This document shows positions 7,671-32,095 of a DNA stretch of 64,000 nt, in pieces. The translations under genes and the position numbers were made by a program. This stretch comes from Malacoraja senta (lineage: Eukaryota). The stretch lies in NCBI GenBank assembly GCA_038087875.1, contig CM075981.1, positions 682,001 through 746,000 of the forward strand, read 5' to 3'. The notes beneath the pieces were generated by a model that saw only the letters and a list, made by a program, of their open reading frames with translations, ran no database searches and had not been told where the DNA came from. Position 1 is the first letter of the stretch. Each line of letters starts with the position of its first letter.

Positions 7671-7671
<1 letters not shown>

Positions 7672-7723
<52 letters not shown>

Positions 7724-7742
7724 ATGTATGTGTATATATATA
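7672..7742. repeat. (TA)n/(TG)n microsatellite in the L1 inter-ORF spacer (also ~40037-40107)
   Basis: Direct inspection. Confidence 0.95.
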
Positions 7743-11921: not shown

Positions 11922-12241
11922 CACTCGGGCTAAAGAATGGATGAAATGTTATACTCTGAAATGTACGAATATATCTCGAACGAAGTTTTTTATCTTAATA
12001 AATGTTTCCATTCTTCTTTAACTATCTTTTTCTTCTCTGTTTTCTTTTTTTTTTCTTTCTTTACTTCATCTATCTTTTTAGTTCTATCTAGTTTAAAATT
12101 TTTTTTAAAAAAAGGCAAAAGGTATTGGAGACAATGTAATAATAATTGACGATATTATCAATTTAAAAATGTAAGACTGGTAATGATGATAATATGTTGT
12201 GTTTTATCTCCAATAAAAAATATTTTCAAAAAAAAAAAAAA

Positions 12242-15200
12242 TGTTTTTCTCATCTCAGTCCTAAAAGATTTCCCCTTTATCCTTAAACTGTGACCCCTTG
12301 TTCTGGACTTCCCCAACATCGGGAGCAATCTTCCTGCATCTAGCCTGTCCAACCCCTTAACAATGTTGTAAGTTTCTATAAGATTCCCCCTCAATCTTCT
12401 AAATTCTAGCGAGTACAAGCCGAGTCTATCCAGTCTTTCTTCATATGAAAGTCCTGACATCCCAGGAATCAGTCTTGTGAACCTTCTCTGTACTCCCTCT
12501 ATGGCAAGAATGTCCTTCCTCAGATTAGGAGACCAAAACTGTACGCAATACTCCAGGTGTGGTCTCACCAAGACCCTGTACAACTGCAGTAGAATCTCCC
12601 TGCTCCTATACTCAAGTCCTTTTGCTATGAATGCTCACATACCATTCGCTTTCTTCACTGCCTGCTGCACCTGCATGCCTACTTTCAATGACTGGTGTAC
12701 CATGACACCCAGGTTTCGTTGCATCTCCCCTTTTCCTAATTGGCCACCATTCAGGTAATAGTCTACTTTCCTGTTTTTGCCACAAAGTGGATAACCTCAC
12801 ATTTATCCACATTATACTGCATCTGCCATGCATTTGCCCACTCACCCAGCCTATCCAAGTCATCTTGCAGCCTCCTAGCACACTCCTCACAGCTAATACT
12901 GCCTGCCAGCTTCGTGTCATCCGCAAACTTGGAGATGTTGCATTCAATTCCCTCGTCCAAATAATTAATATATATTGTAAATAGTTGGGGTCCCAGCACT
13001 GAGCTTTGCGGTACCCCACTAGTCACTGTCTGCCCTTCTGAAAAGGACCCGTTTACTCCTACTCTTTGCTTCCTGTCTGCCAGCCAGTTCTCTATCCACA
13101 TCAATACTGAACCCCCAATACCGTGTGCTTTAAGTTTGTATATTAATCTCTTATGTGGGACCTTGTCGAAAGCCTTCTGAAAGTCCAGATATAACACATC
13201 CACTGGTTCTCCCTTATCCACTCTACTAGTTACATCCTAGAAAAATTCTATAAGATTCGTCAGACATGATTTACCTTTCATAAATCCATGCTGACTTTGT
13301 CCAATGATTTCACCATTTTCCAAATGTGCTGCTATCCCATCTTTAATAACTGACTCTAGCAGTTTCCCCACTACCGATGTTAGACTAACTGGACTGTAAT
13401 TCCCCGTTTTCTCTCTCCCTCCATTTTTAAAAAGTGGGGTTACATTAGCTACCCTCCAATCCTCAGGAACTACTCCAGAATCTAAAGACTAATCTTTCTC
13501 ATAGCCTACATGTTACCCTGGCCTGTTCCTACATCAAAACTAACTTAAAAATATCCATTGACCTTGCCTCCACACCCCTGCAATTTATCTGCAATAAATA
13601 GCTACATTAACCATATTACCTGATACAGCACCCCAAGTATTGTATAAGGATTGTATAATCACTTGCTTTTAGGATAGAATTATGCCAAACAGCAGAACTG
13701 GTTTTGTTTAAAAAGCTGTTTATTAACAAACATATTTTATTGGTTAACCTAAGCTGCTCTTGTCATTAGAGGTGAGAACAGTAATTAGTGATCAATTGAT
13801 ATAATAACCAGATGGGTCTTTCAAAAGCATCGTGTGATAGGAAAGATGTTGTCTAGCTGGAAAGGATACAGAGAAGATTTATGAGGATGTTGCCAGGATT
13901 ACATGGTCTGAGCTATAGTGAGGTTGAGTAGGCTGGGATTCTATTCCTTGGAGCGCAGAGGATGAGGGGTGATCTTATAGAGATGTATAAAATTACAAGA
14001 GGAATAGATTGGGTAGATGCACAGTGTCACTTTCCCCAGTGCAGGTGAATCGGGGACCAGAGGACATAGGTGTAATGTGAAGGGGAAAAGATTCAATAGG
14101 AATCTGAGGGGTAACTTTTTCACAGAAAGGGTGGTGGGTATATGGAACAAACTGCCAGAGGAGGTAGTGAGGCAGGGACTATCCCAATGTTTTAGATACA
14201 GTTAGATAGGGTACTTGGATAGGACAGGTTTGGAGGGATATGGGGCAAATGCGAGCAGGTGGAACTGGCCTGGGACATGTTGGCTGGTGTCGGCAAGTTG
14301 GGCAGAAGGGCCTGTTTCCACACTGAGTCACACTATGACTCTATGTGTATAGCAATTATTTTGGAAAAGAACTTCATGAAAGCATTTGAAGGGATTTCTA
14401 CTGTAAAACCAAGGTAATGTGTGTGTGTCTGAGGGTGAATCCAGAAGTTAACCCTCACTCTTGTTTAGGGAGTTTGTACGTTCTCCCCGCCTGGGTTTTC
14501 TCCGAGATCTTCAGTTTCCTCCCACACTCCAAAAACGTATCGGTTAGTTGGTTAGTTGGCTTGGTATAAGTATAAATAGTCCCCAGTGCATGTAGGATGT
14601 TAATGCGTGGGATCACTGTTCGGTGCGGACTCGGTAGGTGAAGGGCCAGTTTCCACGCTGTATCTCTAAACTAAACTAAACTAGTTTAGGTTTAAGAAAG
14701 AACTGCAGATGCTGGAAAAAACGAAGGTAGTAAAAAATGCTGGAGAAACTCAGCGGATGAGGCAGCATCTATGGAGCGAAGGAATAGGTGATGTTTCGGG
14801 TCGAGATCCTTCTTCAGACTGATGTGGAGGTGGGGGCGGGAGGCAGGAAGAAGAACGGAAGCGAAGGTGACAGTAGGCTGTGGGAGAGCTGGGAAGGGGA
14901 GGGGAAGGAGGGAGAAAGCAAGGACCACCTGAAATTGGAGAAGTCAATGTTCATACCACTGGGGTACACTACATATAGTAACTACACTACTACTAGTGTA
15001 GGTGGGCAGTTTGGTCAGCATGGTCAAGTTGGGAAGAAGGGCCTGTTTCTGCACTATATGACTCTATGAGTTTAACTCTGGTGCCAGTGTCCCACCCTGC
15101 TCTGCCCCACTCACCCTTCACCCTGGCACTGTGACATGTGGGTGGATTTGGACTTGACCATGGTTCTCCACACCTCACAGATCTGATAACCCACCCTGCA

Positions 15201-16000
15201 TACTGTCATAACAACCCTAACCCGTGGAACCAATGATTTGGTTTCAAAATATTTACACTGTTGTTCAAATCTTCTTATCAACCTCACAACTTCCTATTTC
15301 TCAAAAACAGACATATAATGCTGGAGTAACTCAATGGGTCAGGCAGCATCTCCAGAGAACATGGATAGGTGACGTTTTGGGTTCGGACCCTTCTTCAGGC
15401 TGATTGTAGTAGGGGGGAGAAAGCTGGGAGAGAGGTGGGGGAAGGATGAAGCCTGGCAAGTGATAGGTGGATACAGGTGAGGGAGAGAGGGTTACTGGCT
15501 GATGGGTGGACGAAGGCCAGAGATGGAAAGAAGATAAAAGGCTGTGAGATGGTGATATGAGATATGGAAGAGGCATGAAATGTGAAGCTGGAAGAAAGGA
15601 TATATATATATATATATAGATGTGGAAAGGGACGGAGATTAGTGGAAAAGATTGTTGTGGGTTAATTACTTAAAACTAGAAAATTCAATGTTCCCACCAT
15701 TGGGTTGCAATCTACTCGAGCGGACTATCAGATATCACTGCATCTGTACTTCCTTGTGTCTTCCTATTTCTCAACCTATTTTGTTGTGAGTTGCTCACAT
15801 TGTGTTGTCACACTGCTACACTGGTGATGGAGAGGCTTGTTCTGGGTGATATTTGTGGGGTTGGGTTTGCTGTAGGTGGAACTGCAACCACCCCCAGAGA
15901 CCCCAGTTGGATTCTGACCTCCGGCGCTATCAGTGTGGAGTTTGCACGTTCTCCCTGTGACCGCGTGGGTCTCCTCTGGGTGCTCCGGTTTCCTCCCACA
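12242..16000. repeat. Older internal duplicate of 1-~3500 (offset ~12512, ~2% diverged); begins with the CR1 remainder 12242-~13490(-)
   Basis: ORFs 251/12763, 2192/14692 and 3299/15791 are paralogous; about 14 differences in the first 700 bp. Confidence 0.93.
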
Positions 16001-17133
16001 TCCCTAATACATGCGAGTTTGTAGGTTAAATACCTCTGCAAGATTGTCGCAAATGTGTAGGGAATGGATGAGAAAGTGGGATAACAGAACTAGTGTATAC
16101 ATGTAGACAAAAATGTCAGAGAAACTCATCGTTTTTGTCTACCGCTTTTCCAGCATCTGCAGTTTCTTCTTAAACATAGTGTGTACAGGTGATCAATGGT
16201 CGGCATGGACTCGGTGGGCCAATGGGCCTGTTTCCATGCGGTATCTATAAACCAAACTAATTCTACCCTTATCACTTATGATCTTATGACAAAAATTCAG
16301 CATCTTTTATTACATTGGATTATTTTAATCATTATTCAATGTGCAGGGTTTTACACAACAATTCAATTGGTAGTAAAGTTAAAAGTTCACATTCTGGAGA
16401 GCCTGCTTTGAGTTCTAGTCTATGTACTGCTGTCTTTTGGGTGAATGTCAGGATGTACAGACGTGTCTGCAAACATAGGTACAGAATTCAGCCATTTTCT
16501 CCATCGAGTCTACTCCGCCATTCAATCATGGATGATCTATCTTTCCCCCTCCATCCCATTCTCCTGCCTTCTCCCCACAACTTTTGTCACCCTGAGTAAA
16601 CCTGTCAATCTCCAATTTAAAAATATCCATTGACTTGGCCTCCACAGCCATCTGTGGCAATGAATTCCAACAGATTCATCACCCTCTGGTTAAAGAAATT
16701 CCTCCTCAAGTGGTCAAGTTAGATTGGACATAGGTGGGGTGTGGTGATGCTGTAGGGTCAAGGTGATGAGATTTGTCCATCTGCAACTGGTGAACACCCT
16801 CTTTGGCCCTGAAAAGCTAAACGATGATTATTGGACGTCATTCCATCAGAACAACAATATTGATATAACGATTACCCTTAATTTTTATCTTATTGTTCTA
16901 ACGCGTGTCCAAGTTCAATACTTGTAATCATGTAACCATTTTTATATCCCCATTGCTCAATGGTTCAATGGTACTTGATTGTCTCATGCACATGGGTACA
17001 GTGAAATTTCTTTTGCATAGAATTCAGTACAAATCTTACTTTATATAAGCACAGCTGAAGCTAAGAACAAGATTGTATTAATAGCAGATTATATGATACA
17101 GTACACTAGAGTTGCCACATTTCTGGCAGTATC

Positions 17134-17140
17134 TTATATT
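17134..17140 (-). CDS. Gene 1 candidate terminal coding exon (R-I-stop), followed by putative 3'UTR
   Basis: tttaag|A ATA TAA is phase 2 and compatible with the TM exon; the paralog at 59494-59500 reads A AAA TAA with the stop in the same place. Alternative: 16448-16466 (R-H-V-C-T-S-stop). Confidence 0.5.
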
Positions 17141-17828
17141 CTTAAACATCAAATTGATAAAAAAGTATTGTCATATTTTGGGCTTAAAGTCTCGTTGTCG
17201 TGGGGACTGCACTGGGTGGGAGTTGCAGGGGTCGGCCTGGCCTGGCGATGTTGTTGGTGCCTCCACCGCCGCTCCGTGCCGCTGCAGGACGTGTCCGCTC
17301 CGCACGCTCGTCCCCGACCTCTGTGGGGCCTCCAGCGGCACCCGATCCACCGGCTGCTGCAGGGCCTCCAGCAGCCCACTCGCACTCCGCCCACACCTCG
17401 ACCAACCAACGCACCCTTTTCCCCTCACCTCCCACGCCGTCTCCCAGCCAGCTCACCGGCACTGTTCTTCTCCTCCCTCCACCGCTGCCGACCCCATCTC
17501 CAACATCTCGGCTGTTTTTTTCCTTGAATAACAATTAAAACGCAGTTTATAATCTCTACCATCAAATTTTACCCGAGGAAATGACCCAGGGCGGCACAGT
17601 GGCGCAGCGGTAGAGTTACTGCCTTACAGCGCCAGAGACCCGGGTTTGGCGCTGTAAGGCAGCGTGGGTTTTATCCGGGTGCTCCGGTTTCCTCCCACAA
17701 TCCAAAGACGTGTAGTTTTGTAGGTTAATTGGCTTCTGTATAATTGTAAATTGTCCCTCATGTGTAGGATAGTGCGAGTGTACGGGGTGATCATTGGTCA
17801 GCGCGGATTTGGTTGGCTGTAGGGCCTA

Positions 17829-20017
17829 CAGTGCCCTCCATAATGTTTGGGACAAAGACCCATCATTTATTTATTTGCCTCTGTACTCCACAATTTGAGA
17901 ATAGTAATAGAAAAAAAAATCACATATGTTAAAGTGCACATTTTCAGATTTTTATACATTTTGATTTCACCAGGTAGAAATTACAGCAGTGATTATACAT
18001 AGTCCAGTTCAGGGCACCATAATGTTTGGGACACAACAATGTCATGTAAATGAAAGTAGTCATGTTTAGTATTTTGTTGCATATCCTTTGCATGGAATGA
18101 ATGCCTGAAGTCTGAGATTCATGGACATCACCAGTTGCTGGGTGTCTTCTCTGGTGATGCTCTGCCAGGCCTGTATTGCAGCCATCTTTAGCTTATGCTT
18201 GTTTTGGGGGCGAGTCACCTTCGGTTTTCTCTTCAGCATATAAAAGGCATGCTCAATTGGGTTCAGAATGACTTGGCCACTCAAGAATTGACCATTTTTT
18301 AGCTTTGAAAAATTCCTTTGTTGTTTTTGCAATATGTTTGGAATCATTGTCTTGCTGTAGAATGAACCGTCAACCTCTAGCAGATAGGATGTCTCTATAC
18401 ATGTCAGAATTCATTATGCTACTACCATCAGCAGTTGCATTACCAAGGAAGATAAATGGGTCAGTACCTTCAGCAGCCATACATGCCCAGGACATAACAC
18501 CGCCACCACCGTGTTTCACAGATGAGGTGGTATACTTTAGATCTTGGGCAGTTCCTTCCCTCCTCCATACTTTGCTCTTGCCATTACTCTGATATGTTAA
18601 TCTTACATAGGTACATAGATACATAGAAAATAGGTGCAGGAGTAGGCCATTTGGCCCTTCGAGCCTGCACCGCCATTCAATATGATCATGGCTGATCATC
18701 CAACTCAGTATCCCGTTACCTGCCTTCTCTCCATACCCCCTGATCCCCTTAGCCACAAGGGCCACATCTAACTCCCTCTTAAATATAGCCAATGAACTGG
18801 CCTCAACTACCCTCTTTGGCAGAGAGTTCCAGAGATTCACCACTCTCTGTGTGAAAAAGTTTTTCCTCATCTCGGTCTTAAAGGATTTCCCCCTTATCCT
18901 TAAGCTGTGACCCCTTGTCCTGGACTTCCCCAACATCGGGAACAATCTTCCTGCATCTAGCCTGTCCAACCCCATAAGAATTTTGTACGTTTCTATAAGA
19001 TCCCCTCTCAATCTCCTAAATTCTAGCGAGTATAAGCCAAGTCTATCCAGTCTTTCTTCATATGAAAGTCCTGACATCCCAGGAATCAGTCTGGTAAACC
19101 TTCTCTGCACTCCCTCTATGGCTATAATGTCCTTCCTCAGATTTGGAGACCAAAACTGTACGCAATACTCCAGGTGTGGTCTCACCAAGACCCTGTACAT
19201 CTCATCTGTCCACAAGACCTTTTTCCAGCACTGTGGTTGCTCTTTTAAGTACTTCTTCGCAAACTGTAAGCCGGCCATCCTACTTTTGCGGCTAACCAGT
19301 GGTTTGCATCTTGCAGTGTAGCCTCCGTATTTATGTTCATGAAATCTTCTGCAGACAGTGGTCATTGACAAATCCACGCCTGACTCCTGAAGAGTGTTTC
19401 TGATCTGTCGGACAGGTGTTTGGGGTTTTTTTTTTTATAGAGATAATTCTTTTGTCATCTTGGCCTGATGTTTTCCTTGGCCTGCCATTCCCTTTGCGAT
19501 TAGTAAGCTCACCAGTGCTCTCTTTCTTCTTAATGATGTTCCAAACAGTTGATTTTGGTAAGCCTAATGTTTGGCTGATGTTTCTAACAGTTTTATTCTT
19601 GTTTCTCAGTCTCAGAATGGCTTCTTTGACTTTCATTGGCACAACTTTGGTCCTCATGTTGATAAACAGCAATAAAAGTTTCCAAATGTGATGGAAAGAC
19701 TGGAGGAAAGACTAGGTGCTGAGAGCTTTCTTATCCCTGCATTGAGGAGGCAATTAAACACACCTGAGCAATTACAAACACCTGTGAAGCAATGAGTCCA
19801 AAACATTATGGTGCCCTGAAATGGGGGGACTGTGTATAAACACAGCTGTAATCTCTACATGGTGAAACCAAAATGTATAAAAATACCCTTTAATAAAATC
19901 TGTCCATGTGCACTTTCACCACATGTGATTTTTTTCTATTACAAATCTCAAATTGTGGAATACAGAGGCAAATAAATAAATGAAGGGTCTTTGTCCAAAA
20001 CATTATGGAGGGCACTG
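17829..20017 (-). mobile_element. Tc1 (IR/DR type) DNA transposon, defective, containing a CR1 insertion
   Basis: TA target duplication, CAGTGCCCTCCATAATG termini, ~210 bp inverted repeats with an inner CCATAATGTTT direct repeat, transposase motifs VLWTDE, QQDNDSKH, NPIEH. Confidence 0.95.
18605..19199 (-). mobile_element. 5'-truncated CR1 inserted into the Tc1 transposase
   Basis: YRVLVRPHLEYCVQFWSP...RKNFFTQRVVNLWNSLP; acatag tail repeats; splits transposase between TDE and KIN. Confidence 0.93.
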
Positions 20018-20115
20018 TATGTCCACACTTTATCTCCAGAATTCTAAAGTAAATTCCCATCATTTCCAATTGAATTTAATGTCATCACCAGAGTGAAGAG
20101 ATTACAAACTTTTAC

Positions 20116-20223
20116 CTTTTAAAAGTTGTCACACAGCTGATGGAAACCGGGAAGAGAAGCAGAACTCCAAAGAGTACCCAGCGTGACACACCCCAAACAC
20201 GGCGAACATTCAACACGATGTCC
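20116..20223 (-). CDS. Gene 1 transmembrane exon (108 nt, phase 2 to 2): RDIVLNVRRVWGVSRWVLFGVLLLFPVSISCVTTFK
   Basis: ttccag| acceptor, AAAAG|GTAAAA donor, hydrophobic helix containing Arg; phase-compatible with the stalk exon. Confidence 0.88.
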
Positions 20224-21148
20224 CTGGAAATCCAAGGAAATATTATTACTTCCACACAGAGTTATCAAAGATCAACGCTGGGAGATTATTTCCATCATAT
20301 TGCACACGGAATCATTCAGTGTGATCCAAGGTTGTGGCGTAGACATTGGTAAGATGTTTATATCGCAACATGCACCCATTCCTTGGAGGTGTTCCATGAC
20401 TACATACATTGACAACTTAGATGTTCATGTTGGTGGTCAGACATAGAGCATGAAAACATGTCCTTGGACCTAATTTCCCCACGCCGACCAAGATGTCCTT
20501 ATCGACACTATTCCCATCTGCCGGCCTTAGATGTTATTGTTGGAAGTATGATTAACGTGTTTACAGATTACACCAAAATTGTAGCATTTTGGATAGTACG
20601 ATAATCATAGACCACAGAGGGATAAGAAGCAACTGGTATGTTGGGCAGAGCAATGCCAGCCGGTATTGAACCATGATAAGTGTGAAGTTATTTGTTTTTG
20701 GCATCAAATAAGGGTAGACATTCACAATGGTAGGGCCACTGGGTGTACTAAGGACAGAGGGACTTTAATCAAGGCCAATGACTATTTATCAATGGACTGG
20801 AATGTGATCAGCCACGCTTTCTCAAAGTACTGGGCATGATTTTACTAACAATAGGATACGATCCTACCGGACTACTGGTGCTGTCAGTACATAGTTTGTA
20901 TGTTCTCCCTGTGATCACAAGAGTTTACTCTGGGTTCTCCAGTATCCTCCCACATTCCAAAGACATGCCGGTTTGTAGTAAATTGCCCCTAGTATGTAGA
21001 ACAGAACTAGTGTATGGGGTGATCGCTGATCAGAGCGGACTCGGTGGGCCAAAGGGTCCATTTCCACGCTGTATCTTTTAACTGAGCTGAACTGAACTTA
21101 ACTAATTTGTTCTCAGGTGAGGCTGAGTTGGCTCTTCGAGTTACTAAC

Positions 21149-21233
21149 CTGTTTGGAGGTGTTGAACCAAGAGACTCAGTGGAACTTGCTGCCTCGGTGG
21201 TGATGATCATATCTGGGCGGCTTGTTTGAGACC
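21149..21233 (-). CDS. Gene 1 stalk exon (85 nt, phase 1 to 2): GSQTSRPDMIITTEAASSTESLGSTPPN
   Basis: ctttatctccacaag| acceptor, AACAG|GTTAGT donor, S/T-rich; bridges V (phase 1) to TM (phase 2). Confidence 0.87.
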
Positions 21234-22550
21234 CTTGTGGAGATAAAGTGAATGAAGTTTTTGAACATTAAATGTCTGAGAGCACGTCCTGTGCCTCTTT
21301 AGTGAGGTGTGGGAGATGCCTCAGTTGGGAATGCTCTTGCTCTGTGTGGGGAGATTCCTGGGTTCAAATCCGACTCCACACATTTGGGCAAAGATCCTTC
21401 TGAGGCCACCATAGATGGACCAAGCCTCTTGATCTAGACAGGAGGCTCACCCATTAAGATGCCACCGGATGGTCGCAAGCATTCATTGACTTCTTTCATG
21501 CCCTTCAGAGTCCCACAGGCTGTGTTGTCTGCCTGCTGCTGGAGTTAGGCAAGTGTCTTCTACGTTGGAGAAGAACTTGGGAGTGGGAGGATCCATGGAC
21601 TATTTTCATTACGTGGACTGAATTGAAAATAATGCAATTTGGTTGGAGGTATCTACCTGAAACATTAAGTCTCGTCTCTCTCCATAAATGCTGCCCGACC
21701 CGTTGAGTATTTCATCTTGTACAGTTTGTGTGGCTCAGTGTAAAGTCTATATCACTCACATCATGCGGATTCTTAGTTCATAAGTTCATAAATAATAGGG
21801 GCAAAATTAGGCCATTTGGTCCATTGAGTCTACTCCGCCATTTAATCATGGCTGATCTATCTCTCCCTCTCAACCCCATTCTCCTGCCTTCTCCTCATAT
21901 CGCTTGACATGCGTACTAATCAAGAACATGTCAATCTCCACTTAAAATACCCAATGACTTGGCCCTCATTGGAAACATGGTAAAAGCTTTTCCCTGTACC
22001 TCAGTACAGGCGACAACAATAAACTGAGCTCATGAATCACCATAGTTTGTGAGACACAAGGAATTGCAGGTGTTGGAATCTTGAGCAATACACAAAGTGC
22101 TGGAGTAACTCAGCAAGTCAGGCAGCATCTGTGGATGGAATGAATAGACGATGTATAGGCTTGGGACCCTTCTTCAGATGTTGTGTGTGTGGTGGGTGTG
22201 ACATTGACGGGAAGGGGGAGAGGGTGAGGGGGTGGTTCCACCCCCCCTGCTCCAGTGAGGGGGCACCAGAGGTTCTGGTCCCGGAGAGATCGTGTTTGGG
22301 GAAATGAACCGTCAGCAGCAGGACCGCCGGTCCCCATTGATGAGATCCCCCCCACCCCCCACACTGCTCCTGGGACAGTGGGATCTTGGTGTGGCCCCAT
22401 GCAGCGGGTCCCCACTACCCCCCCTCACCTCCCCCCAAACTCCACCCCCCCCACGGACCCCCGGGGATGTGGCACCGTCAGGACCGAGGCCGGGAAATCC
22501 CAGGCTGGAATTTTCACATCTGGGGGAGTGAGGAGAGATCGTCAACGTAC

Positions 22551-22874
22551 CTTCAGAAACCTTCAATGAGATGGAGGTCTTTTCAATGAATGACAATATT
22601 CCCTTTCCTATCACACACCAGTAGCGTCCTTCATCACTCTTCTCCAGGTTGTTGATGGTTACTGAAAGTATCTGTTCTGTTTTGTTATCAGTCATCGATG
22701 TTCCCCCTTGTCGTGGGTGATCAGTAGAAACCACGGTAGATGATTTCCAGTAATCATCACCTTTACTCCATAGCTTCCTGTTGTCACTGTATTCCTGATC
22801 ATATGGACATTCCACAGTGACCGACTGCCCCAACTCTCCCCTCACCTCCTCGGGTCCAGTTATTCCCCATGACC
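22551..22874 (-). CDS. Gene 1 Ig V-type domain exon (324 nt, phase 1 to 1), CD300/pIgR/TREM-like (MDIR-like)
   Basis: cccacag|GG acceptor, GAAG|GTACGT donor; GITGP..V.G.LGQSVTVECPY, LW, LSVTINNLEKSDEGRYWC; NKT sequon. Confidence 0.94.
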
Positions 22875-23029
22875 CTGTGGGCACATTAATGATGAAAGAT
22901 CACTCACACTGCAGCAACACAAGCTGAGGTTTAACAATAAAAAACATGTCATTTGTGCTGTTCAGACAGGTTCATGGTTTCGCATAGATCATGTGCAGCA
23001 AGGGACTGCAGGTGCTGGTTTACACCAAA

Positions 23030-23170
23030 GATAGACACAAAGAGCTGGAGTAACTCAGCGGGGCAGCCAGCATCTCTGGAGAAACCGACAGGTGATGTTC
23101 CCTCACCCATTCCTTCTCTCCAGAGATGCTGCCCGTCCCGCTGAGTTACTCCAGCATTTTGTGTCTCTCT
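23030..23170. repeat. Fold-back hairpin of inverted PLE-derived termini (similar at ~23440-23640 and in gene 2 intron 1)
   Basis: gctggagtaactcagcggg...catctctggagaaa and ttctctccagagatgctg...cccgctgagttactccagc are reverse complements. Confidence 0.8.
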
Positions 23171-24852
23171 TCTTTTGCATAGAACCTGTTGCACTTTAAT
23201 GCTTTTCCCGCAGGTGTTAATTCCCATTTCACCGGGATTGTTCCCCAAGTTCCAGTGAAAGCAGAAGTGCTTCTGAATCTACCTGGCGCCCGGATCATCC
23301 TTCCCTGTGGGCGTGGCTTGACCTGAGTGGTGGTCATGTGACAGGAAGCCAAACCTGTCACTCACTCTGACCCACCCTGTGTTCAATCTCACTACAACCC
23401 ACTTCCCCATTGAACAAGTAGAAACAAGGAACTGCAGATGCTGGTTAATACTCAAAAGGACACAAAGTGCTGGAGTAACTCAACGGGTCAGGAACTATCT
23501 CTGGAGAAAGTGGAATTCTCTGGGTGAAAAGGTTTTTCCTCATTTGAGTCCAAAATGGCCTACCCCTTATTCAGGTCTCAACCGTAAACGTCACCTATCC
23601 ATGTTCTCCAGAGATGCTGCCTGACCTGCTGACTTACTGGTATGGTATGGTATATGGACACACTGATTTGTTTTGTAGTAAATGCCTACTATGTTCTGTG
23701 TGCTGAAGCAAAGCAAGAATTTCATTGTCCTATCAGGGACACATTACAATAAACTCACTTGGACTTGAACTTGAACTCCAGCACTTTGTGCTTTACTAAA
23801 GCTGAATAGGCAGCTGCCTGTGATGCCTCAGCAGGTCAGGCAACATCGCTGGAGAACATGGATATGTAATGTTACAGGTAGAGACATGGTGGCACAGTGG
23901 CACAGGGGTAGAGTTGCTGCCTTACAGCGCCAGAGACCCGTGTTTGATCCTAACCTCGGGTGCTGTCTGTACGGAGTTTGTACGTTCTCCCCGTGACAGC
24001 GTGTGCTTTCTCCAGTTTCCTCCCACACTCCAAAGACATGCAGGTTTGTAGGTTAACTGGCTTATGTTAAAATTGTAATTTGTTCCTCGTGTGTAGGATA
24101 GTGTTACTGTGCCATGTGATCGATGGTCGGCGTGGACTTTGTGGGCCAAAGGGCCTGTTTCCGTGCTGTATCTCTAAAGTCACTAAAGGAAAGTCACCAA
24201 GTGATGCAGCTTGACCTGCAGTGTTACTCCAGCACTTTGTGTTTTACTAAATCTGAATAGCCAGTGGTGACTCAGCAGGTCAGGCAGCATCTGTGGAGAA
24301 CATGGATAGGTGACGTTTCAAGTCAAGACCATGAGATACTGCCTGACCTACTGAGTTACGCCAGCACTTTGTGCCCCATTGAACTAAACTTCCCGGCCTG
24401 AGGTGGAAGCTGGATCTGCCACTGATGTTTCAAACTCCACGTCCACCTGGAATAATCATGAGGTGTCTTTTTCACACAAAGTCTGGTCGGTGTATGGATC
24501 AAGCTGCCAGAGGAAATAGTTGAGGCAAGGACTATCCCATCATTTAAGAAACAGTTGGACAGGTACATGGATAGGACAGGTTTGAAGGGACATGTACCAA
24601 ACGTAAACAGGTGGGACAGGTGTTACTGAGACATGTTGGCCGGTGTGGGTAAGTTGGGCCGAAGGGCCTGTTTCCACACTGTATCACTATGACTCTAACA
24701 CATGTGAAACTCTGCAGATTCAGGAGCTGGGGTGGAGACACATCATCAGATCAGTCCAGGTCCGAACTCAGAGGCTGGGGAAAGCACGGTGTGAAGAACA
24801 GCTCGAGCAGCAGAGTCTGTTGTAAGGAAGCTGGCTTTTCTCAGAGTGGAGA

Positions 24853-25062
24853 TGTAGAGCCGTGCATGTTCCTTTAACATGGTGACCTCACTTCTACTAA
24901 CCACTCCCCATTAGCTTCAGTATAAATGTAACCTTCCCACCCCTAGCTCGCTCTCTAGCTCCGGTAACGGACCACGAACAGCTAGGGCAATATGTGTGTA
25001 TACGAATACAATGTATGCAATAAACTAGAGTGAAGACACCATGTGTTTGGACAGTCTTTACA
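24853..25062 (+). mobile_element. 210 bp solo LTR in gene 1 intron 1
   Basis: TG...CA ends, GAGA 4-bp target duplication (24849-24852 and 25063-25066), TATAAA at 24921, AATAAA at 25019; empty site in gene 2 near 57243. Confidence 0.8.
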
Positions 25063-25300
25063 GAGAGATTACCACAACTTCTCCAAATGCTAAATTGGAC
25101 AGTCACTCTGGTGCTTCCTCATTTGAGATGCCCGCCTGTTCCCATCGGCTGGCTTTCACAGGTTTTTTCTTTGAATATGCTAAGGTTTAGGTTCAACATT
25201 TCCCATTGCAGTGCGTGGAGGGAGTGCCGTGTGTCTTTGATAGACACTAAATGCTGGAGTAACGCAGCGGGTCAGGCGGCATCTATGGAGAGAAGGAATG

Positions 25301-25334
25301 GGTGACGTTTTGGGTCGAGACCCTTCTTCAGACC
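25301..25334 (-). ncRNA. Best-preserved minimal hammerhead ribozyme motif (paralog 57472-57505)
   Basis: GGT-CTGAAGA-A-GGGT-CTCG-ACCC-AAAA-CGTC-ACC: stems I and II and palindromic ACGT stem III intact; G12 changed to A. Confidence 0.65.
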
Positions 25335-25539
25335 GAGTGTCGGGGGGTGGAGGAAGTCAAGAGATATGCAAGAGGTAAGGCGTGAAAACGACAGAACAAA
25401 GCAGATGGTGATAAGGAAATGTAGATCGCAGAGCCGGAGAGCAGGAGGAATCACAGAGGGGGAACAGCGAGGGAGGGTGTTGCAGAATTCTCGTCGGGTA
25501 GAAGAGGAGAACTTCTGTCCCAGGCTAACTGAACCACAC

Positions 25540-25790
25540 CAAAAGTCAGAGAGTCGTTGGTTCAACTCCCACTCCCGAAGCTCGAGGACAGAGGGAGTGC
25601 GGTACTGAGGGGAATCACCACTGCTGGAGGTGATGTCACTTTGCCGAGGCATTTAGCTGATCTGCTGTCTGCTCTCTCAAGTCACTGAGAAAGTTCACCT
25701 GTAGATAGTTTGCACCAGAATAGTGGAGCAAACTATCTGTTCTGGGGCCAAGAGTTACCCCTACACCCAAGATCAACAGGGCCAGCTGCG
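25540..25790 (+). mobile_element. Possible ancient DeuSINE/SacSINE-like remnant
   Basis: ggttcaactcccactcc...gagggagtgc...actgctggagg resembles that family as I recall it; highly degenerate. Confidence 0.35.
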
Positions 25791-26170
25791 GACTTTAATT
25801 CTCAGGCTGCGGCCTCTGGTCCTAGACTCTCCCATTAATGGAAACATCCTCATCCCATCCACTCTATCCAGGCCTTCATTATTCGGTATTAAACATTAAA
25901 CTTCATTATTCGGTAAGTTTCAATGAGGTCCACAAGGCCAGGCAAGCTCTAGATGGTTATCTCCCTTCTCCACAGGGAGCTAGCTGTGTGCGATTTGGCT
26001 GCACACAACACGACAACAGCCGCTGATGGAAGTCTCTACAGGAACTAACGAGTGTTAAGCAATTGATCATCAGCTCCCCACACAGTACAGAGAAGTCCTC
26101 GGTTACAAATAATTCAAGGCGCTGGTAAATAATTCTAAAGAACAGAGCATTTTGTAAAACAACGATTTAC

Positions 26171-26267
26171 CTGGTGTGAGACCAACAGCGACAAGAACCA
26201 GCAGAGCGACTGTTCCCCTGGATCTGGGCCGTTTCTGGTGGGTGAATTCTCCCTGTCCCACCGCCAT
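26171..26267 (-). CDS. Gene 1 leader exon (97 nt): MAVGQGEFTHQKRPRSRGTVALLVLVAVGLTP
   Basis: Kozak gacATGG, hydrophobic core, CCAG|GTAAAT phase-1 donor matching the V acceptor; conserved in gene 2. Confidence 0.88.
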
Positions 26268-26299
26268 GTCTCGGCTACGTTGGATCGGTTTGGTCCCTG

Positions 26300-26420
26300 C
26301 ACTGCGTTTGAGTTGTCCTCTTCCTCATTCACAACAGAAGTCAAACAGTCAATTTCCGTTTACTCAGGAAACGACTTTGCAGTGGTTCGAGACTAACTTG
26401 GTGACTCACTTGCCACCTCC
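26300..26420 (-). promoter_or_regulatory. Putative proximal promoter of gene 1 with Ets/PU.1-like GAGGAA (26321-26326) and AP-1 TGACTCA (26402-26408)
   Basis: Short motifs just upstream of the leader ATG in a block conserved between paralogs; motif matches alone are weak evidence. Confidence 0.3.
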
Positions 26421-27899
26421 CCCAGCCTCCTCACCACGGACAATGCACCTATCAGGAGTGCGCTGCAACGCTCTCCTGTTGCCTGGATTGGAGCATCTCC
26501 TCGAAGCTCTGCTTCATCCTGGTGACATTTGCCCACTTGACTGGCGCTCTGTCCGCCACTGCAAACATTCCCTTGCCCACCCCCTCAACCCCCTCCCCCA
26601 AATGCAGGCACACTGTGTCCGAACTTGAATGGGGTTAGGAGGCAGAGATCAGCCATGTTTGAATGGCGGAGTAGACTCGATGGGCCGAATGGCCAAATTC
26701 TACTCCTGGAATGTGTGAACTTTTTCACACAGAGAGTTGTGAGTCTGTGGAATCCTCTGCCTCAGAGGGCGGTGGAGGCAGGTTCTCTGGATACTTTCAA
26801 GAGAGAGCTAGATAGGGCTCTTAAAGATGGCGGAGTCAGGGAAATGGGGAGAAGGCAGGAAAGGGGTACTGATTGTGGATGATCAGCCATGATCATATTG
26901 AATGGCAATGCTGGCTCGAAGAGCCGAAAGGCCTACTCCTGCACATATTGTCTATTGTCTATTGCCAAACGCGATCAGATAAGTCAACTCACGTCACCAG
27001 ATAAACTCCTTGAAGGACAATTCACATATTTGAGCATCGGAGACCGGGTAAAGCTTAGTTTGAGGATGTGATTCATAAAATCATAGAGTGATACAGCACG
27101 GAAACAACTTGCCCTATGCCGATCAAGATGTCCCATGTACGCTAGTCCCTCTTTAGTTTAGTTTAGTTTAGAGATACAGTGCGGAAACAGGCCCTCCGGC
27201 CCACCGTGTCCGCACCGTCCAGTGATCCCCGCACATCAACACAAATGTTTACATTTACACCAACCCAATTAACCTACAAAGCTGTTCATCTTTGGAGTGT
27301 GGGAGGAAACTGAAGTTCTCGGAGAAAACTCATGCAGGTCACTGGGAGAAAGTACAGACTATGTACAGACAAGCACCTGTAGCCAGGATCAAACCCGGGT
27401 ATCTGGCGCTGTTATACAATGTAAGGCAGCAACTCTACGGCTGCGCCACCGTAAAAATCAGGCCTTTGTTTGACCCCTGTCCCTACAAACCTTTCCTATT
27501 CACGTACCATGTCCTAATGCTTTTAAATGTTGTTAATAGTACCTGTCTCCACTAGCTCCTCTGGACATGTTCCTTCCATATACCCATCAGCTTCTGTGAG
27601 ATAACATTGTTGAGGTAGGATTAGGGTTGTGTGAGGGAGAAGACAAAGGAGATTGCATATACTAGAATCTGGAACAATAGGCAGAACACCTGAAAAACTC
27701 AACGGGTCAGGCAGCATCTGTGGAGGCAAAAAGTGCATGTTTGTATTCCGGCCGAGACACTACTTCGGGCTGAGGGTAAAAAATGGATATTTACCAATAT
27801 ATGAGGAGATGGGTCAAATGCGGGCAAGTGGGACTAGTGGACTAGGGTGGCGCAGTGGTAGAGCTGCTGCCTTACAGCGCTTACAGACAGGTTCGACTG

Positions 27900-30800
27900 T
27901 TAGACAGACTACGGGTGCTGTCTGTATGGAATTTGTACATTCTCCCTGTGACCGCCTGGGTTTTCTTCGAGATCTTCATTTTCCTCCCACACTCCAAAAA
28001 TATAGGTTTGTAGGTTAGTTGGCTTGGAACAGCTGTAAATAGTCCCTAGTGCGTGTAGGATAGTGTTAATGCGTGGGGATTGCTGTTCGGTGCGGGCTCG
28101 GTGGGACGAAGGGTCAGTTTCCACGCTGTATCTCTAAACTAAACTATTGTGGGTAAGCAGTTTGGTCAGCATGGTCAAGTTGGGAAGAAGGGCCTGTTTC
28201 TGTGCTATATGACTCTATGAGTTTAACTCTGGTGCCAGTGCCCCGCCCTGCTCTGCCCCACTCACCCTTCACGCTGGCACTGTGACATGTAGGTGGATTT
28301 GGATTTGACCATGGTTCTCCACACCTCACAGATCTGATAACCCACCCTGCATAGTCATAACAACCCTAACCCGTAGAACCAATGATTTGGTTTCAAAATA
28401 TTTACACTGGTGTTCAAATCTTCTTATCAACCTCACAACTTCCTATTTCTCAAAAACAAACATATAATGCTGGAGTAACTCAATGGGCCAGGGAGCATCT
28501 CCAGAGAACATGGATAGGTAACGTTTTCGGTTGGGACCCTTCTTCAGGCTGATTGTAGTAGGGGGGAGAAAGTTGGGAGAGAGGTGGGGGAAGGATGAAG
28601 ACTGGCAAGTGATAGGTGGATACAGGTGAGGGAGAGATGGTTATTGACTGATGGGTGAACGAAGGCCAGAGATGGAAAGAAGATAAAAAGCTTTGGGATA
28701 TGGAGAGAAGAGGCATGAAATGTGAAGCTGGAAGAAAGGATATATATAGTTGGAAAGGGATGGAGGTTAGGGGAAAGGATTGTTGTGGGTTAATTACTTA
28801 AAACTAGAAAATTCAATGTTCCCACCATTGGGTTGCAATCTACCCGAGCAGACTATCAGATATTACTGCATCTGTACTTCCTTGTGTCTTCCTGTTTCTC
28901 AACCTATTTTGACGTGAGTTGCTAGCATTGTGTTGTAACACTGCTACACTGGTGATGGAGAGGGTTGTACTGGGTGATATTTGTGGGGTTGGGGTTGCTG
29001 AAGGTGGAACTGCAACCACCACCAGAGACCTAGGTTCAATTCTGACCTCCGGCGCTATCGGTGTGGAGTTTGCACGTTCTCCCTGTGACCGCTGGGTCTC
29101 CTCTGGGTGCTCCGGCATCCTCCCACATCCCCAAAACGTGTGGCTCTGTAGGTTAATTGGCCCTCTTGTCGAATTGCACTCAATGTGTAGGGAGTGCATG
29201 CAAAAGCGGTGTAACGTGGGACTAGTGTGAACAGGTGATCGATGGTCAGCGTGGACTCGGTGGGCCGAAGGGTCTGTTTCCATGCTGTATCTCGAACCAG
29301 CATGTGATTCGATGCCAAATTCCACCTGACAATGGTGCTGTGAAGAACCTCGAGACTTTTCCAGCACCTTTAATGCACTGTTGAAATGCAAGTTGCAATG
29401 CAAAATGAAATTATTGCAAAGAATTGCTCAATAAACCTTTAGTCAGAGGGTGATGAATCTGTGGAATTCTTTGCCACAGAGGCTGTCAGTGGATATTTTT
29501 AAGGCAGAGATAGAGAGATTCTTAATTAGTTCAGGTGTCACGGGTTATGGGGAGAAGGCAGGAGAATGGGGTTAGGAGGGAGAGATGGATCAGCCATGAT
29601 TGAATGGCGCAATAGACTTGATGGGCCGAATGGCCTAATTCTACTCCTTTCACCTAAGAACTTATGACAAAATTCAGCCATCTTCATTTACATTGGATTA
29701 CTTTAACCATTATTCAAAGTGCAGCATTTTACACGGCAATTCTATTGGTAATAAAGTTAAAAGTTCACATTCTGGAGAGCCAGCTTTGAGTTCTAGTCTA
29801 CGTACTGCTGTCTTTTGGGTGAATGTCAGGATGTACAGAAGTGTCTGCAAACATTGGTGCCTTTTTGAGGCAGCGACTCCGATAAATAAAATGTTTGGAG
29901 CTGAGTTCCAGAGGTCACCCCTCACCCTGCCACTATGTCCTACAGTGGTATAGGACAGGCAGCACACCCTCCCCACTGACGATCAAGGAGCCTCTGTGTG
30001 GAGATAGATGATCAGATCAATCCAGATCATGTTCATAAGTTATAAGAGCAGAATTAGGACATTCGGCCCATCAAATCCACTCCGCCATTCAATCAATCAT
30101 GGCTGATCTATCTTTCCCTCTCGACCCCATTCTCCTGCCTTCTCCCCATAACCCCCGACACTCGTACTAATCAAGAATCTATCAATCTCCGCCTTAAAAA
30201 TGTCCTTTGACTTGGCCTCCACATCCTTCTGTCGCAATGATTTCCACAGATTCACCACCCTCTGACTAAAGAAATTCGTTCTCATCTCCTTTCTCAAACT
30301 ATGCCCTTTTATTCTGAGGCTAGGGCACAAATTCATCACCCTCTCTCTCAAGGGTGTCTTGGGTGACTTTCCCAGGCTACTTGAGCCACACCATGGGCCA
30401 GCGTAGACATCCAGCAAAAGGTCAGTTTGTGGCAGGGTGTGGTGGAGATGCCCTTCAAAATAAGGGAAGGTATCCCACGCCAGTGGGCCACATGAGTGGC
30501 AAGGGTATGGGGTAAATTTGTGTAATTTGTGTAAACAGTATTGAATGTATGTCTAGCCTCCGAGAATGTCGGATGGAGTTTTGTAAGGATCATGAATTGT
30601 ATATATTTTATTTTTCTAATAAAGTATATTTTGAAATTTAAAAAAACCCGGAGTCAGAGTGTTGTGGGTTCAACTCCCACTCCAGATGCTGTCACTCTGG
30701 CCTGCTGCTCTGCTGTCTGCTCTCGCAAGCCTGCTTTCTCTCTTCAGTGCAGCACGGAGGTGCAGCGGTTAGCTGCTGCCTCACAGCGCCAGAGACCCGG

Positions 30801-31557
30801 GTTTGATCCTGACTACGGGTGCTGTCTGTGTGGAGTTTGAACGTTCTCCCTGTGACCTCGTGGGTTTCCTCCAGGTGCTCTGGTTTCCTCCCACATCCCT
30901 AATCCATGCGAGTTTGTAGGTTAAATACCTCTGCAAGATTGTCGCAAATGTGTAGGGAATGGATGAGAAAAGTGGGATAACAGAACTAGTGTGTACAGGT
31001 AGACAAAAATGCTGGAGAAACTCAGCGTTTTTGTCTACCTTCATGTTCCAGCATCTGCAGTTCCTTCTTAAACATAGTGTGTACAGGTGATCAATGGTCG
31101 GCGTGGACTCGGTGGGCCAATGGGCCTGTTTCCATGCGGTATCTCTAAACCAAGCATAGAAACATAAAAACATAGAAAATAGGTGCTGGAGTAGGCCATT
31201 CGTCGCTTCGAGCCTGCACCGCCATTCAATATGATCATGGCTGATCATCCAACTCAGTATCCTGCACCTGCATCCTCTCCATACCCCCTGATCCCTTTAG
31301 CCACAAGGGCCACATCTAACTCCCTCTTAAATATAGCCAATGAACTGGCCTCAACTACATTCTGTGGCAGAGAATTCCAGAGATTCACCACTCTCTGTGT
31401 AAAAAATGTTTTTCTCATCTCGGTCCTAAAGGATTACCCCCTTTTTTTTTTTTTTTACTGACTTCCGGTGGCGCTATGGAGGCTTGAGTCCAGTGCCAAC
31501 TAGCTCCGTGCCGAAGAATCTGAAAACGGGAGAAAATCGGGTCTTACCTGCAGCGAT
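27900..31557. repeat. Third paralog of the ~1970-5938 block (offset ~25619); diverged to ~29100, near-identical afterwards
   Basis: ORFs 4074/29693, 4478/30097 and 4922/30541 translate identically. Confidence 0.93.
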
Positions 31558-32095
31558 TTGGAAAGGCCCTATAACCCCCACAATCAAAATGTGGATTATA
31601 GAAATGACGGAGACCTTAAATGTGGAAAGAATCAGATGTGGAATCAGAATCAAATGTGGAAAGAAAAGAATCAGATTTGCCCTGTTGGACAAACAGGAAT
31701 TATTCGTTGGAACATGGTCTCCCTTTATTGATTATTTAAAGGGTCAGAATGGTTCAGCACAAGAACCTGACTAGCACTCGGGCTAAAGAATGGATGAAAT
31801 GTTATACTCTGAAATGTACGAATATATCTCGAACGAAGTTTTTTATCTTAATAAATGTTTCCATTCTTCTTTAACTATCTTTTTCTTCTCTGTTTTCTTT
31901 TTTTTTTTTCTTTCTTTACTTCATCTATCTTTTTAGTTCTATCTAGTTTAAAAATTTTTTTTAAAAAAGGCAAAAGGTATTGGAGACAATGTAATAATAA
32001 TTGACGATATTATCAATTTAAAAATGTAAGACTGGTAATGATGATAATATGTTGTGTTTTATCTCCAATAAAAAATATTTTCAAAAAAAAAAAAA
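31460..32095 (+). mobile_element. Internally deleted L1 (636 bp): 98 bp of 5' end joined to the 3' end, in the same insertion site as the full copies
   Basis: Matches 5841-5938 plus 11744-12241; same T15 5' flank, poly(A) and CR1 flanks. Confidence 0.95.

What the first reader, a model, noticed from the sequence alone, without database searches (positions are those of the whole stretch)
22380..22550. Ectodomain swapping: duplication breakpoint in the V-stalk intron at a G-quadruplex-like tract
Identity between units falls from ~99.9% to ~95-97% at ~22410/54775, about 140 bp from the V donor. Genes 1 and 2 therefore have identical stalk/TM/tail but different leader-V modules. Unequal crossover here would make gene 1 a chimera (V from the left neighbour, signalling half from gene 2). 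The switch coincides with minus-strand GGGGG-N5-G8-N8-G6-N6-G7 (22411-22462). This suggests a recurrent germline route for recombining recognition and signalling modules. Prediction: a V exon near-identical to gene 1 about 9.5-9.8 kb left of the window, attached to a different stalk/TM.
Basis: partly seen in the sequence, partly recalled or inferred. Interest (0 to 1): 0.8.

Follow-up and report, generated by a model that had tools for sequence, protein, structure and literature searches.

The report
V-exon island in skate receptor array
In a skate's tandem array of CD300-like immune receptor genes, 32-kb repeat units are almost identical except for a 1.5-kb island around the ligand-binding V exon; the reported identity switch is one real edge of that island, but nothing shows that the G-rich tract beside it causes the exchange.

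Summary
Unit A (1-24764) and unit B (32366-57130) differ at 21 places in 22,413 bp (0.09%). From 22414 on they differ by about 4-5%, starting 137 bp downstream of the V-exon donor. The switch abuts the strongest G-quadruplex-type tract in the window.

- Genes 1 and 2 do share identical stalk, TM and tail exons and differ in V.
- Gene 1's V does not come from the left neighbour. V exons exist at the predicted place, on a different stalk, but they are only 88-90% identical.
- Gene 1 shares with that neighbour the leader exon, the presumed promoter region and the 5' part of intron 1, from about 23884 (0 substitutions in 4.9 kb).
- The divergent part is therefore a 1.47-kb island (22414-23883) between two roughly 30.9-kb near-identical copies.

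A second contig, C5746, carries at least 4 units and includes hybrid units whose breakpoint lies inside the V exon. This fits ordinary unequal crossover or gene conversion in a copy-number-variable array.

The G tract follows every V exon in the family and is also present in Amblyraja. Only 1 of 4 sharp junctions lies on it, so a causal role is unproven. This is a new member of a known kind, of moderate interest.

The parts
22343..22444 (.). Left junction (J_L): interval in which A/B identity falls from 99.9% to about 95%
   Evidence: ML change point 22413, support 22343-22413. The first differences are at 22414 (three alleles among the units) and 22444-22445.
22410..22462 (-). G-rich tract on the sense strand of the V-stalk intron, +89 to +141 nt from the V donor; candidate G-quadruplex and/or intronic G-run element
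   Evidence: ViennaRNA with G4 terms gives -48.8 against -29.4 kcal/mol without them. Conserved after every V donor tested and in Amblyraja.
54776..54827 (-). Copy of the G-rich tract in unit B (gene 2)
   Evidence: G4Hunter50 -2.46.
22414..23883 (.). Divergent core ('alpha' type) of unit A: 137 bp of intron 2, the V exon and about 1 kb of intron 1. It is 2.9% from the beta core of unit B overall (2.0-4.9% by segment).
22551..22874 (-). V exon of gene 1 (V-set Ig domain)
   Evidence: Pfam PF07686, E 8e-13; 75% identity to Amblyraja 'CMRF35-like molecule 3'; splice sites.
54916..55239 (-). V exon of gene 2 (beta type); 16 nucleotide and 11 residue differences from gene 1
   Evidence: (pN 0.052, pS 0.034).
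23884..23950 (.). Right junction (J_R) in intron 1. From here unit A is identical to the left neighbour's flank (Z) and about 6.8% from unit B. It is the likely junction of the tandem duplication.
   Evidence: the last Z-private difference is at 23883, then 0 substitutions to 28800.
22654..22698 (.). Position of a second breakpoint, inside the V exon, seen in units U1 and U3 of contig C5746. These 'gamma' units are beta-like at 22414-22653 and alpha-like from 22699.
   Evidence: hybrid V domain.
1..22413 (.). Near-identical part of unit A, containing the stalk, TM and tail exons of gene 1. Its copy is 32366-54779.
   Evidence: 21 differences.
21149..21233 (-). Stalk exon of gene 1
   Evidence: identical in gene 2.
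20116..20223 (-). Transmembrane exon of gene 1, with an Arg in the membrane span
   Evidence: identical in gene 2.
17453..17522 (-). Short cytoplasmic tail exon of gene 1, with the stop codon
   Evidence: identical in gene 2.
26171..26267 (-). Leader exon of gene 1. It lies in the spacer that is near-identical to the copy left of the window, which serves gene 0.
   Evidence: 2 nt differences from gene 2's leader at 58470-58568.
24765..32365 (.). Spacer of the tandem unit, about 100% identical to C5:674502-681235 just left of the window

Best explanation
The window holds two units of a head-to-tail array (period 32,365 bp) of activating-type, single-V CD300/CMRF35-like (MDIR-like) receptor genes in a skate or ray genome.

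Shown:
- The units are 99.9-100% identical over about 30.9 kb. That stretch carries the 3' part of the V-stalk intron, the stalk, TM and tail exons, a long intergenic stretch, the leader exon and the 5' part of intron 1.
- A 1.47-kb island (22414-23883) around the V exon stays 2-5% diverged. The reported switch at 22414 is the downstream edge of this island.
- The other edge (23884-23950) is where gene 1 joins a flank of the left neighbour's type.
- A second contig has more units and hybrid V exons.

Inferred:
- The array grew and is kept homogeneous by unequal homologous crossover and/or gene conversion between misaligned units.
- The junction at about 23884 is the crossover, between intron 1 of the left neighbour and intron 1 of the ancestral gene, that created the repeat.
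- The alpha core is either an older paralogous or allelic V-exon lineage captured by that exchange, or a short conversion patch.
- 22414 is the end point of an earlier exchange, inherited by units A and U2.

Net effect: one signalling half (Arg-bearing TM, short tail) is combined with different V domains. The G-rich tract beside the junction is a conserved element of the intron after every V exon in this family. It may favour breaks or branch-migration stops there, but it is equally likely to be an intronic G-run splicing element that simply sits where any V-proximal breakpoint would fall.
For: - Period and tiers of identity.
- Exon map and family: V-set; CMRF35-like molecules of Amblyraja and Pristis.
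- Stalk, TM and tail exons identical between genes 1 and 2.
- Two-sided island. The left neighbour Z is 5% from both alpha and beta in 22958-23883. It is then identical to the alpha units from 23884 to 28800, with 0 substitutions and 3 single-base indels. The spacer copy left of the window is about 100% identical.
- Alpha-beta divergence jumps from 2.0% to about 6.8% exactly at 23884, as expected if the flank beyond is of Z type.
- Contig C5746 is colinear with the whole window at 99.875% and differs at only 2 of 6,870 bp in the unique right flank. It carries units U1-U4 at the same period.
- Core types run gamma, alpha, gamma, beta in C5746, against alpha, beta in C5.
- The gamma V domain is an alpha/beta hybrid.
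- Shared variants among units give incompatible partitions, which requires exchange between units. Sites 3704 and 10633 group B with U2, whereas the core groups A with U2.
- Alpha and beta each carry derived states relative to 12 paralogous V copies, and no sampled paralog is a donor.
- In two sequencing runs, contigs coming from the left end at 22413, and both letter sets are present at 22445-22653.
Against: - The order of events cannot be resolved from one individual. A duplication followed by a conversion patch, two crossovers, and capture of a divergent allele all give the same picture.
- No donor for the alpha core exists in the assembly.
- C5746 might be an alternative assembly of the same array rather than the second haplotype. 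Its left end is cut, and I could not fetch more of C5.
- No long reads could be laid, so read-level continuity across 22414 and 23884 is untested.
- No expression data were found.
Confidence: 0.75

Rival explanations
1. G-quadruplex hotspot. The G-rich tract downstream of each V exon forms G4 or R-loop structures in the germline. These stall replication or nick the DNA, and so start or stop exchanges. V cassettes are therefore preferentially swapped at this site. This can be true on top of the main explanation.
For: - The tract is the strongest G4 candidate in 64 kb and the only one in the unit with runs of at least 4 G.
- J_L abuts it.
- It is conserved at +86 to +107 after all V donors tested and in another genus.
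- Homology between stalk-proximal and N-terminal V-exon copies ends inside the tract, at unit position 22438.
- G4 motifs are linked to recombination in other variant gene families, for example Plasmodium var genes (PMC5093961, found).
Against: - Only 1 of 4 sharp junctions lies on it. The gamma junction is in the V exon, 190-290 bp away. J_R is 1.4 kb away in repeat-derived intron sequence. The gene-0 C5/C3381 switch is about 320 bp away. All three have G4Hunter25 of 1.0 or less.
- Conditioned on a breakpoint that separates V from stalk, the coincidence has p of about 0.09.
- G runs 90-140 nt downstream of a donor are also what an intronic splicing enhancer looks like.
- Alignments tend to end in low-complexity sequence.
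Confidence: 0.2
2. A single unequal crossover at 22414 made gene 1 a two-part chimera, with V and everything upstream from the left neighbour and the signalling half from gene 2.
For: - Gene 1 does share its leader exon, the presumed promoter region and the distal part of intron 1 with the left neighbour.
- It shares its stalk, TM and tail with gene 2.
- V exons with a different stalk are present at the predicted distance.
Against: - The neighbour's V regions are 88.5% and 90.4% identical to gene 1's, not near-identical.
- In 22958-23883 the neighbour is the outgroup to alpha plus beta.
- Identity with the neighbour begins only at about 23884.
Confidence: 0.04
3. Assembly artefact. The 99.9% identity left of 22414 and the sharp switch come from collapse, polishing cross-talk or a haplotype switch at a homopolymer-rich tract that is hard to sequence.
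For: - Long C/G homopolymers are error-prone.
- The site at 22414 has three alleles, and 22444 is an indel in a C run.
- The region is present twice in the assembly, as C5 and C5746, with different unit numbers.
Against: - The same alpha-type junction is assembled independently in unit A (C5) and in U2 (C5746). These differ by more than 20 private variants elsewhere.
- The diagnostic differences continue for 2.3 kb in ordinary sequence.
- The units carry their own private and shared variants rather than being copies of one consensus.
- Contigs of two sequencing runs branch at 22413-22414 and hold both variant sets.
Confidence: 0.06
4. Selection-maintained island. The whole unit, V included, is repeatedly homogenised, but diversifying selection keeps distinct V exons. 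The island edges then mark how far linked divergence survives, not special sites.
For: - V-exon differences are mostly replacements: 13.5 non-synonymous against 2.5 synonymous, pN 0.052 against pS 0.034.
- Across genera the leader is 100% and the TM exon 95% identical at protein level, while V is only 68-71%.
Against: - pN/pS of about 1.5 on 16 differences is not significant.
- Flanking intron inside the island is as diverged as the exon on one side (4.4%), which is neutral-looking.
- The edges are steps, not gradients.
Confidence: 0.3

Closest known systems
CD300/CMRF35-like receptors; skate 'modular domain immune-type receptors' (MDIR)
   Same: - Single V-set domain, short stalk, and a TM with a basic residue or a signalling tail.
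- A multigene cluster.
- The best protein hits are named CMRF35-like molecules in Amblyraja radiata and Pristis pectinata.
- MDIRs of the clearnose skate are described as multigenic activating/inhibitory receptors related to CD300, TREM and pIgR (PMC3031540).
   Different: - The V domain here lacks the Cys after the conserved Trp that the Amblyraja relative P0002 has.
- No published description of this 32-kb array or of its copy-number variation was found. My literature search was shallow.
Unequal crossover and gene conversion in primate KIR, LILR and other paired-receptor clusters (from general knowledge)
   Same: - Head-to-tail gene arrays with haplotypes that differ in copy number.
- Hybrid genes whose ligand-binding and signalling halves have different histories.
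- Breakpoints in introns and intergenic repeats.
   Different: - The lineage (cartilaginous fish) and the family are different.
- Here the signalling half is homogenised and the V exon is kept apart as a small island, and one class of hybrids breaks inside the V exon.
G4-associated recombination in variant gene families (Plasmodium var genes, PMC5093961; Neisseria pilE and immunoglobulin switch regions from general knowledge)
   Same: A strong G-rich tract on the non-template strand lies next to a cassette that is exchanged.
   Different: No statistical enrichment of breakpoints at the tract is shown here (1 of 4). There is no biochemical evidence, and the exchange is in the germline, not somatic or programmed.

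Membership tests
CD300/CMRF35-like (MDIR-like) IgSF receptor | One extracellular V-set Ig domain encoded by a single phase-1 exon | tested here: met
   Pfam PF07686, E 8e-13 and 3e-12. Exon 22551-22874 with AG/GT sites, phase 1.
CD300/CMRF35-like (MDIR-like) IgSF receptor | Closest named relatives are CD300/CMRF35-like proteins | tested here: met
   75% and 72% identity to Amblyraja radiata 'CMRF35-like molecule 3', and 63% to Pristis pectinata CMRF35-like molecules 5 and 7.
CD300/CMRF35-like (MDIR-like) IgSF receptor | Extra intradomain disulfide (Cys after the conserved Trp of strand C, plus a partner) | tested here: not met
   At that position the window's V domains read Ser (…KLWSKG…), whereas Amblyraja P0002 has Cys (…KLWCKG…). 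This feature is typical of the family rather than strictly defining.
Activating-type paired receptor | Basic residue in the TM helix and a short tail without ITIM/ITAM | tested here: met
   The TM exon encodes an Arg inside the hydrophobic span. The tail is about 25 residues with no Tyr motif. Adaptor pairing was not tested.
Tandem segmental duplication evolving by unequal homologous exchange | Head-to-tail units of constant period | tested here: met
   Period 32,365 in C5. Periods 32,359-32,371 between four V copies in C5746.
Tandem segmental duplication evolving by unequal homologous exchange | Copy-number difference between otherwise allelic haplotypes | tested here: inconclusive
   C5 has 2 units, while C5746 has at least 3.4 units with the same right flank (2 substitutions in 6.9 kb). 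It is unproven that C5746 is the other haplotype.
Tandem segmental duplication evolving by unequal homologous exchange | Hybrid units and incompatible site patterns among units | tested here: met
   Gamma units are beta-like to 22653 and alpha-like from 22699. The partitions {B,U2} at 3704 and 10633 are incompatible with {A,U2} in the core.
G-quadruplex-forming sequence | Four or more G runs of at least 3 with short loops; high G4Hunter score | tested here: met
   Runs of 5, 8, 6, 7 (and 4) G with loops of 5-8. G4Hunter50 -2.32.
G-quadruplex-forming sequence | Folds into a quadruplex in vitro or in vivo | not testable with these tools
   Only an energy-model prediction is available: -48.8 against -29.4 kcal/mol.
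Recombination hotspot at a G4 motif | Breakpoints enriched at the motif over the background | tested here: inconclusive
   1 of 4 sharp junctions lies on the tract. One older homology boundary also ends in it. The sample is too small to judge.
Ectopic gene-conversion patch | An identifiable donor paralog that matches the converted tract | tested here: not met
   Outside the array units, the best match to 22300-23000 is 91%. Alpha- and beta-specific states are spread over many paralogs.

The most novel reading that the evidence does not exclude
The G-rich tract conserved 90-140 nt downstream of every V exon in this receptor family acts as a germline 'cassette boundary'. A G4- or R-loop-prone site would start or arrest exchanges, so that V exons are shuffled between genes and units while the signalling halves are homogenised. 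This would be a switch-region-like device for innate receptors of cartilaginous fish.
Probability: 0.12. Interest if true: 0.75.

Novelty: new member of a known kind. Interest (0 to 1): 0.38.

Why it matters
It is a clean, well-resolved example from a cartilaginous fish of how an innate immune receptor array evolves. Long tracts, including the signalling exons and the leader and presumed promoter region, are kept nearly identical by exchange between tandem units. A 1.5-kb island around the ligand-binding exon stays distinct, and new hybrid V domains arise by crossover inside the exon. Copy number appears to differ (2 against at least 4 units) within one assembly. This extends to skates the mode of evolution known from KIR, LILR and CD300-type clusters. 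It also gives a concrete locus for population work on V-exon diversity. If breakpoints were shown to be enriched at the conserved G-rich tract, it would link non-B DNA to germline diversification of innate receptors. The present data do not show that.

Tried and rejected
I recovered C5:669435-678536 only, through loci of the genome search. The region C5:678537-682000 and anything further left were seen only as hit tables.

2. Read laying returned only contigs of about 100-150 nt, swamped by high-copy repeats in both introns. It cannot show unit counts, phasing or long-range continuity. I used it only for 'both variant sets present' and 'contigs end at 22413'.

3. No RNA runs hold the stretch, so splicing and expression are unverified. 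The exon map rests on protein homology and splice sites.

4. Comparing trees for the V side and the stalk side across about 10 paralogs gave only weakly supported differences. L009/L010 are 11.8% apart on the stalk side and 5.3% apart in V. This is too weak to call the trees either congruent or incongruent.

5. Polarising the alpha/beta differences with 12 paralogs found no donor and no contiguous donor-like tract.

6. L009 against L010 shows a gradual change in divergence, not a sharp one, so it was not counted as a junction.

7. The first literature search was badly posed and mostly returned skateboarding papers. Only PMC3031540 was useful.

8. I did not run structure prediction, the protein atlas or complex prediction, because they do not bear on a breakpoint question.

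Full report
**1. What is at the coordinates**

The window is G000:C5:682001-746000. A self-comparison shows one long direct repeat. Positions 1-24764 match 32366-57130 at 99.5%, with a period of 32,365 bp.

A base-by-base alignment splits this into two regimes. There are 21 difference events in 1-22413 (0.09%), the last at 21595. From 22414 on there is a difference every 20-25 bp.

A two-rate likelihood puts the change point at 22413, with support interval 22343-22413.

On the + strand, C runs occupy 22410-22413, 22418-22424, 22431-22436, 22445-22452 and 22458-22462.

**2. The genes**

The minus-strand ORF at 22551-22884 is a V-set Ig domain (Pfam PF07686, E 8e-13). Its best relatives are 'CMRF35-like molecule 3' of Amblyraja radiata (75% and 72% identity) and CMRF35-like molecules of Pristis pectinata. 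The genome is therefore a skate or ray other than those two species.

This is the CD300/pIgR-like group that the literature calls MDIR in the clearnose skate (PMC3031540).

Mapping the Amblyraja proteins to the window and reading the splice sites gives this model for gene 1, all on the minus strand:

| Exon | Coordinates |
|---|---|
| Leader | 26171-26267 |
| V | 22551-22874 |
| Stalk | 21149-21233 |
| TM (Arg inside the span) | 20116-20223 |
| Short tail, with stop | 17453-17522 |

Gene 2 is the same model shifted by about 32.3-32.4 kb.

The stalk, TM and tail exons of the two genes are identical, and the leaders differ at 2 nt. The V domains differ at 16 nt and 11 residues (pN 0.052, pS 0.034).

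The switch lies 137 bp into the V-stalk intron.

**3. The divergent part is an island with two edges**

The spacer of unit A (24765-31600) has a roughly 100% identical copy at C5:674502-681235, directly left of the window. From loci returned by the genome search I rebuilt C5:669435-678536. I call this left neighbour 'Z' and aligned it with all units.

- Z carries two V exons, at C5:670630-671714 and 672033-672560.
- These V regions are 90.4% and 88.5% identical to gene 1's V region, not near-identical.
- In unit positions 22958-23883, Z is about 5% from both units, which are 2% from each other. Z is therefore the outgroup there.
- The last Z-private difference is at 23883. From 23884 to 28800, Z shows no substitution against unit A or the C5746 units, only three single-base indels.
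- At the same point, the divergence between A and B jumps from 2.0% to about 6.8%.

Gene 1 is thus a three-part mosaic:

| Part of gene 1 | Shared with |
|---|---|
| Leader exon, presumed promoter region, distal intron 1 | Left neighbour (Z) |
| 1.47-kb core, 22414-23883 (V exon plus flanking intron) | Its own |
| 3' part of intron 2, stalk, TM, tail | Gene 2 |

**4. A second version of the array**

Contig C5746 (109.8 kb), read in reverse complement, is colinear with the entire window at 99.875%. It differs at only 2 of 6,870 bp in the unique right flank. It nevertheless holds four V copies at the same period, in units U1 (cut by the contig end), U2, U3 and U4.

The variable sites define three core types:

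| Core type | Units | Pattern |
|---|---|---|
| alpha | A, U2 | Reference type of unit A |
| beta | B, U4 (the last unit) | Differs from alpha across the whole core |
| gamma | U1, U3 | Beta-like at 22414-22653, alpha-like from 22699 |

The gamma breakpoint lies inside the V exon. It yields a hybrid V domain, with an alpha-like N-terminal two-thirds and a beta-like C-terminal third.

Outside the cores all units are about 99.9% identical. They share variants in incompatible groupings. For example, B groups with U2 at 3704 and 10633, whereas A groups with U2 in the core. That pattern requires exchange between units.

If C5746 is the other haplotype, unit number differs (2 against at least 4) within one animal.

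**5. Mechanism**

These are the standard marks of a tandem array evolving by unequal homologous crossover and/or gene conversion.

The jump at 23884, where the flank becomes Z-type, is best read as the crossover between intron 1 of the left neighbour and intron 1 of the ancestral gene. That crossover would have created the repeat.

The alpha core cannot have come from Z. No donor exists elsewhere in the assembly: the best non-array match is 91%. Alpha and beta each carry derived states relative to 12 paralogous V copies.

I cannot separate three histories:
- An unequal crossover in an animal heterozygous for two old V-exon lineages, so that both were captured on one chromosome.
- A duplication followed by a short conversion patch from a donor that is lost or unsampled.
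- Two successive crossovers in an older, diverged array.

In all three, 22414 is a genuine exchange end point that units A and U2 inherited.

**6. The G-rich tract**

It is a strong candidate G4:
- It is the only motif in the unit with runs of at least 4 G.
- It is the top G4Hunter site of the window.
- ViennaRNA with G4 terms gives -48.8 kcal/mol, against -29.4 without them.

It is also a fixture of the family. All V donors tested in paralogous copies have a G-rich tract at +86 to +107 (one N-terminal V copy has it at +175). The Amblyraja gene has one at +96.

Homology between stalk-proximal and N-terminal V-exon copies ends inside it, at unit position 22438.

Against a causal role, three other sharp junctions lie off any G4 motif, with G4Hunter25 of 1.0 or less:
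- The gamma junction, at 22654-22698.
- J_R, at 23884-23950.
- The C5/C3381 switch in gene 0, which has 28 substitutions up to unit position 22093 and none afterwards.

Given a breakpoint that separates V from stalk, the chance of hitting the tract within 30 bp is about 9%. G runs shortly downstream of a donor are also typical of intronic splicing enhancers (general knowledge). I put the hotspot idea at about 0.2.

**7. Artefact check**

- The alpha junction is assembled twice, in A and in U2, in contigs that differ by more than 20 private variants.
- The diagnostic differences extend over 2.3 kb of ordinary sequence.
- In two public runs, contigs arriving from the left end at 22413, and both letter sets occur at 22445-22653.

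No long reads could be laid, so an assembly chimera is unlikely (about 0.06) but not excluded.

**8. Verdict**

What is there is an ordinary but nicely resolved case of concerted evolution with a V-exon island and intragenic hybrids, in a skate CD300/MDIR-like array. It is a new member of a known kind. The G4 link is a lead, not a finding.

Noticed in passing
L034 about 7366 (C5746 about 107366; unit position 22777): Unit U1's V exon has a 1-bp deletion that shifts the frame after '...SDNR'. It is either a pseudogenised unit or a consensus error.
   Followed up: partly
L039 about 3430 (C5 about 675968; unit position 26231): The left neighbour's copy of the leader exon carries a single-base insertion relative to all other units. 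If real, it would break gene 0's reading frame.
   Followed up: no
window 24847-25062: A roughly 212-bp insertion is present in unit A, in Z and in the C5746 inner units, but absent from unit B. It has 99-100% identical copies on many contigs of the genome, so it looks like a very young, possibly active short interspersed element.
   Followed up: partly
L007 against L008 (C3381:47304-50446 against C5:669651-672791): Gene 0 shows the mirror image of the finding. Its two V exons and upstream flank are identical in the two contigs, but the stalk side is 2.8% diverged. The switch is at unit position about 22093-22130, in the same intron and about 320 bp from the G tract.
   Followed up: partly
C3381:52545-55056 (L011, L021, L040): Contig C3381 holds an extra V-exon unit, 97% identical to gene 0's N-terminal V exon and flank, that C5 lacks at this place. 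This is further structural variation in the cluster.
   Followed up: no
window 1-3614, 11812-16070, 31665-35980, 44180-48467; also 2497-5938 / 28148-31557 / 34863-38304: 4.3-kb and 3.4-kb segments are repeated within each unit at about 97% identity. They are older internal duplications or large transposable elements.
   Followed up: no
window 26171-26267 and 20116-20223 against L041 (Amblyraja radiata): Across genera the leader peptide is 100% and the TM exon 95% identical at protein level, while the V domain is only 68-71% identical. The V exon evolves much faster than the rest of the gene.
   Followed up: partly
window 7000-12000 and 39000-44000: There is a 5-kb AT-rich block (GC 0.28-0.32) inside each unit, against about 0.45 elsewhere.
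   Followed up: no
window 18370-19377 (minus): A 335-aa ORF fuses Tc1/mariner-like transposase pieces with a reverse-transcriptase C-terminal segment. These are nested transposable-element remains between the tail and TM exons.
   Followed up: no
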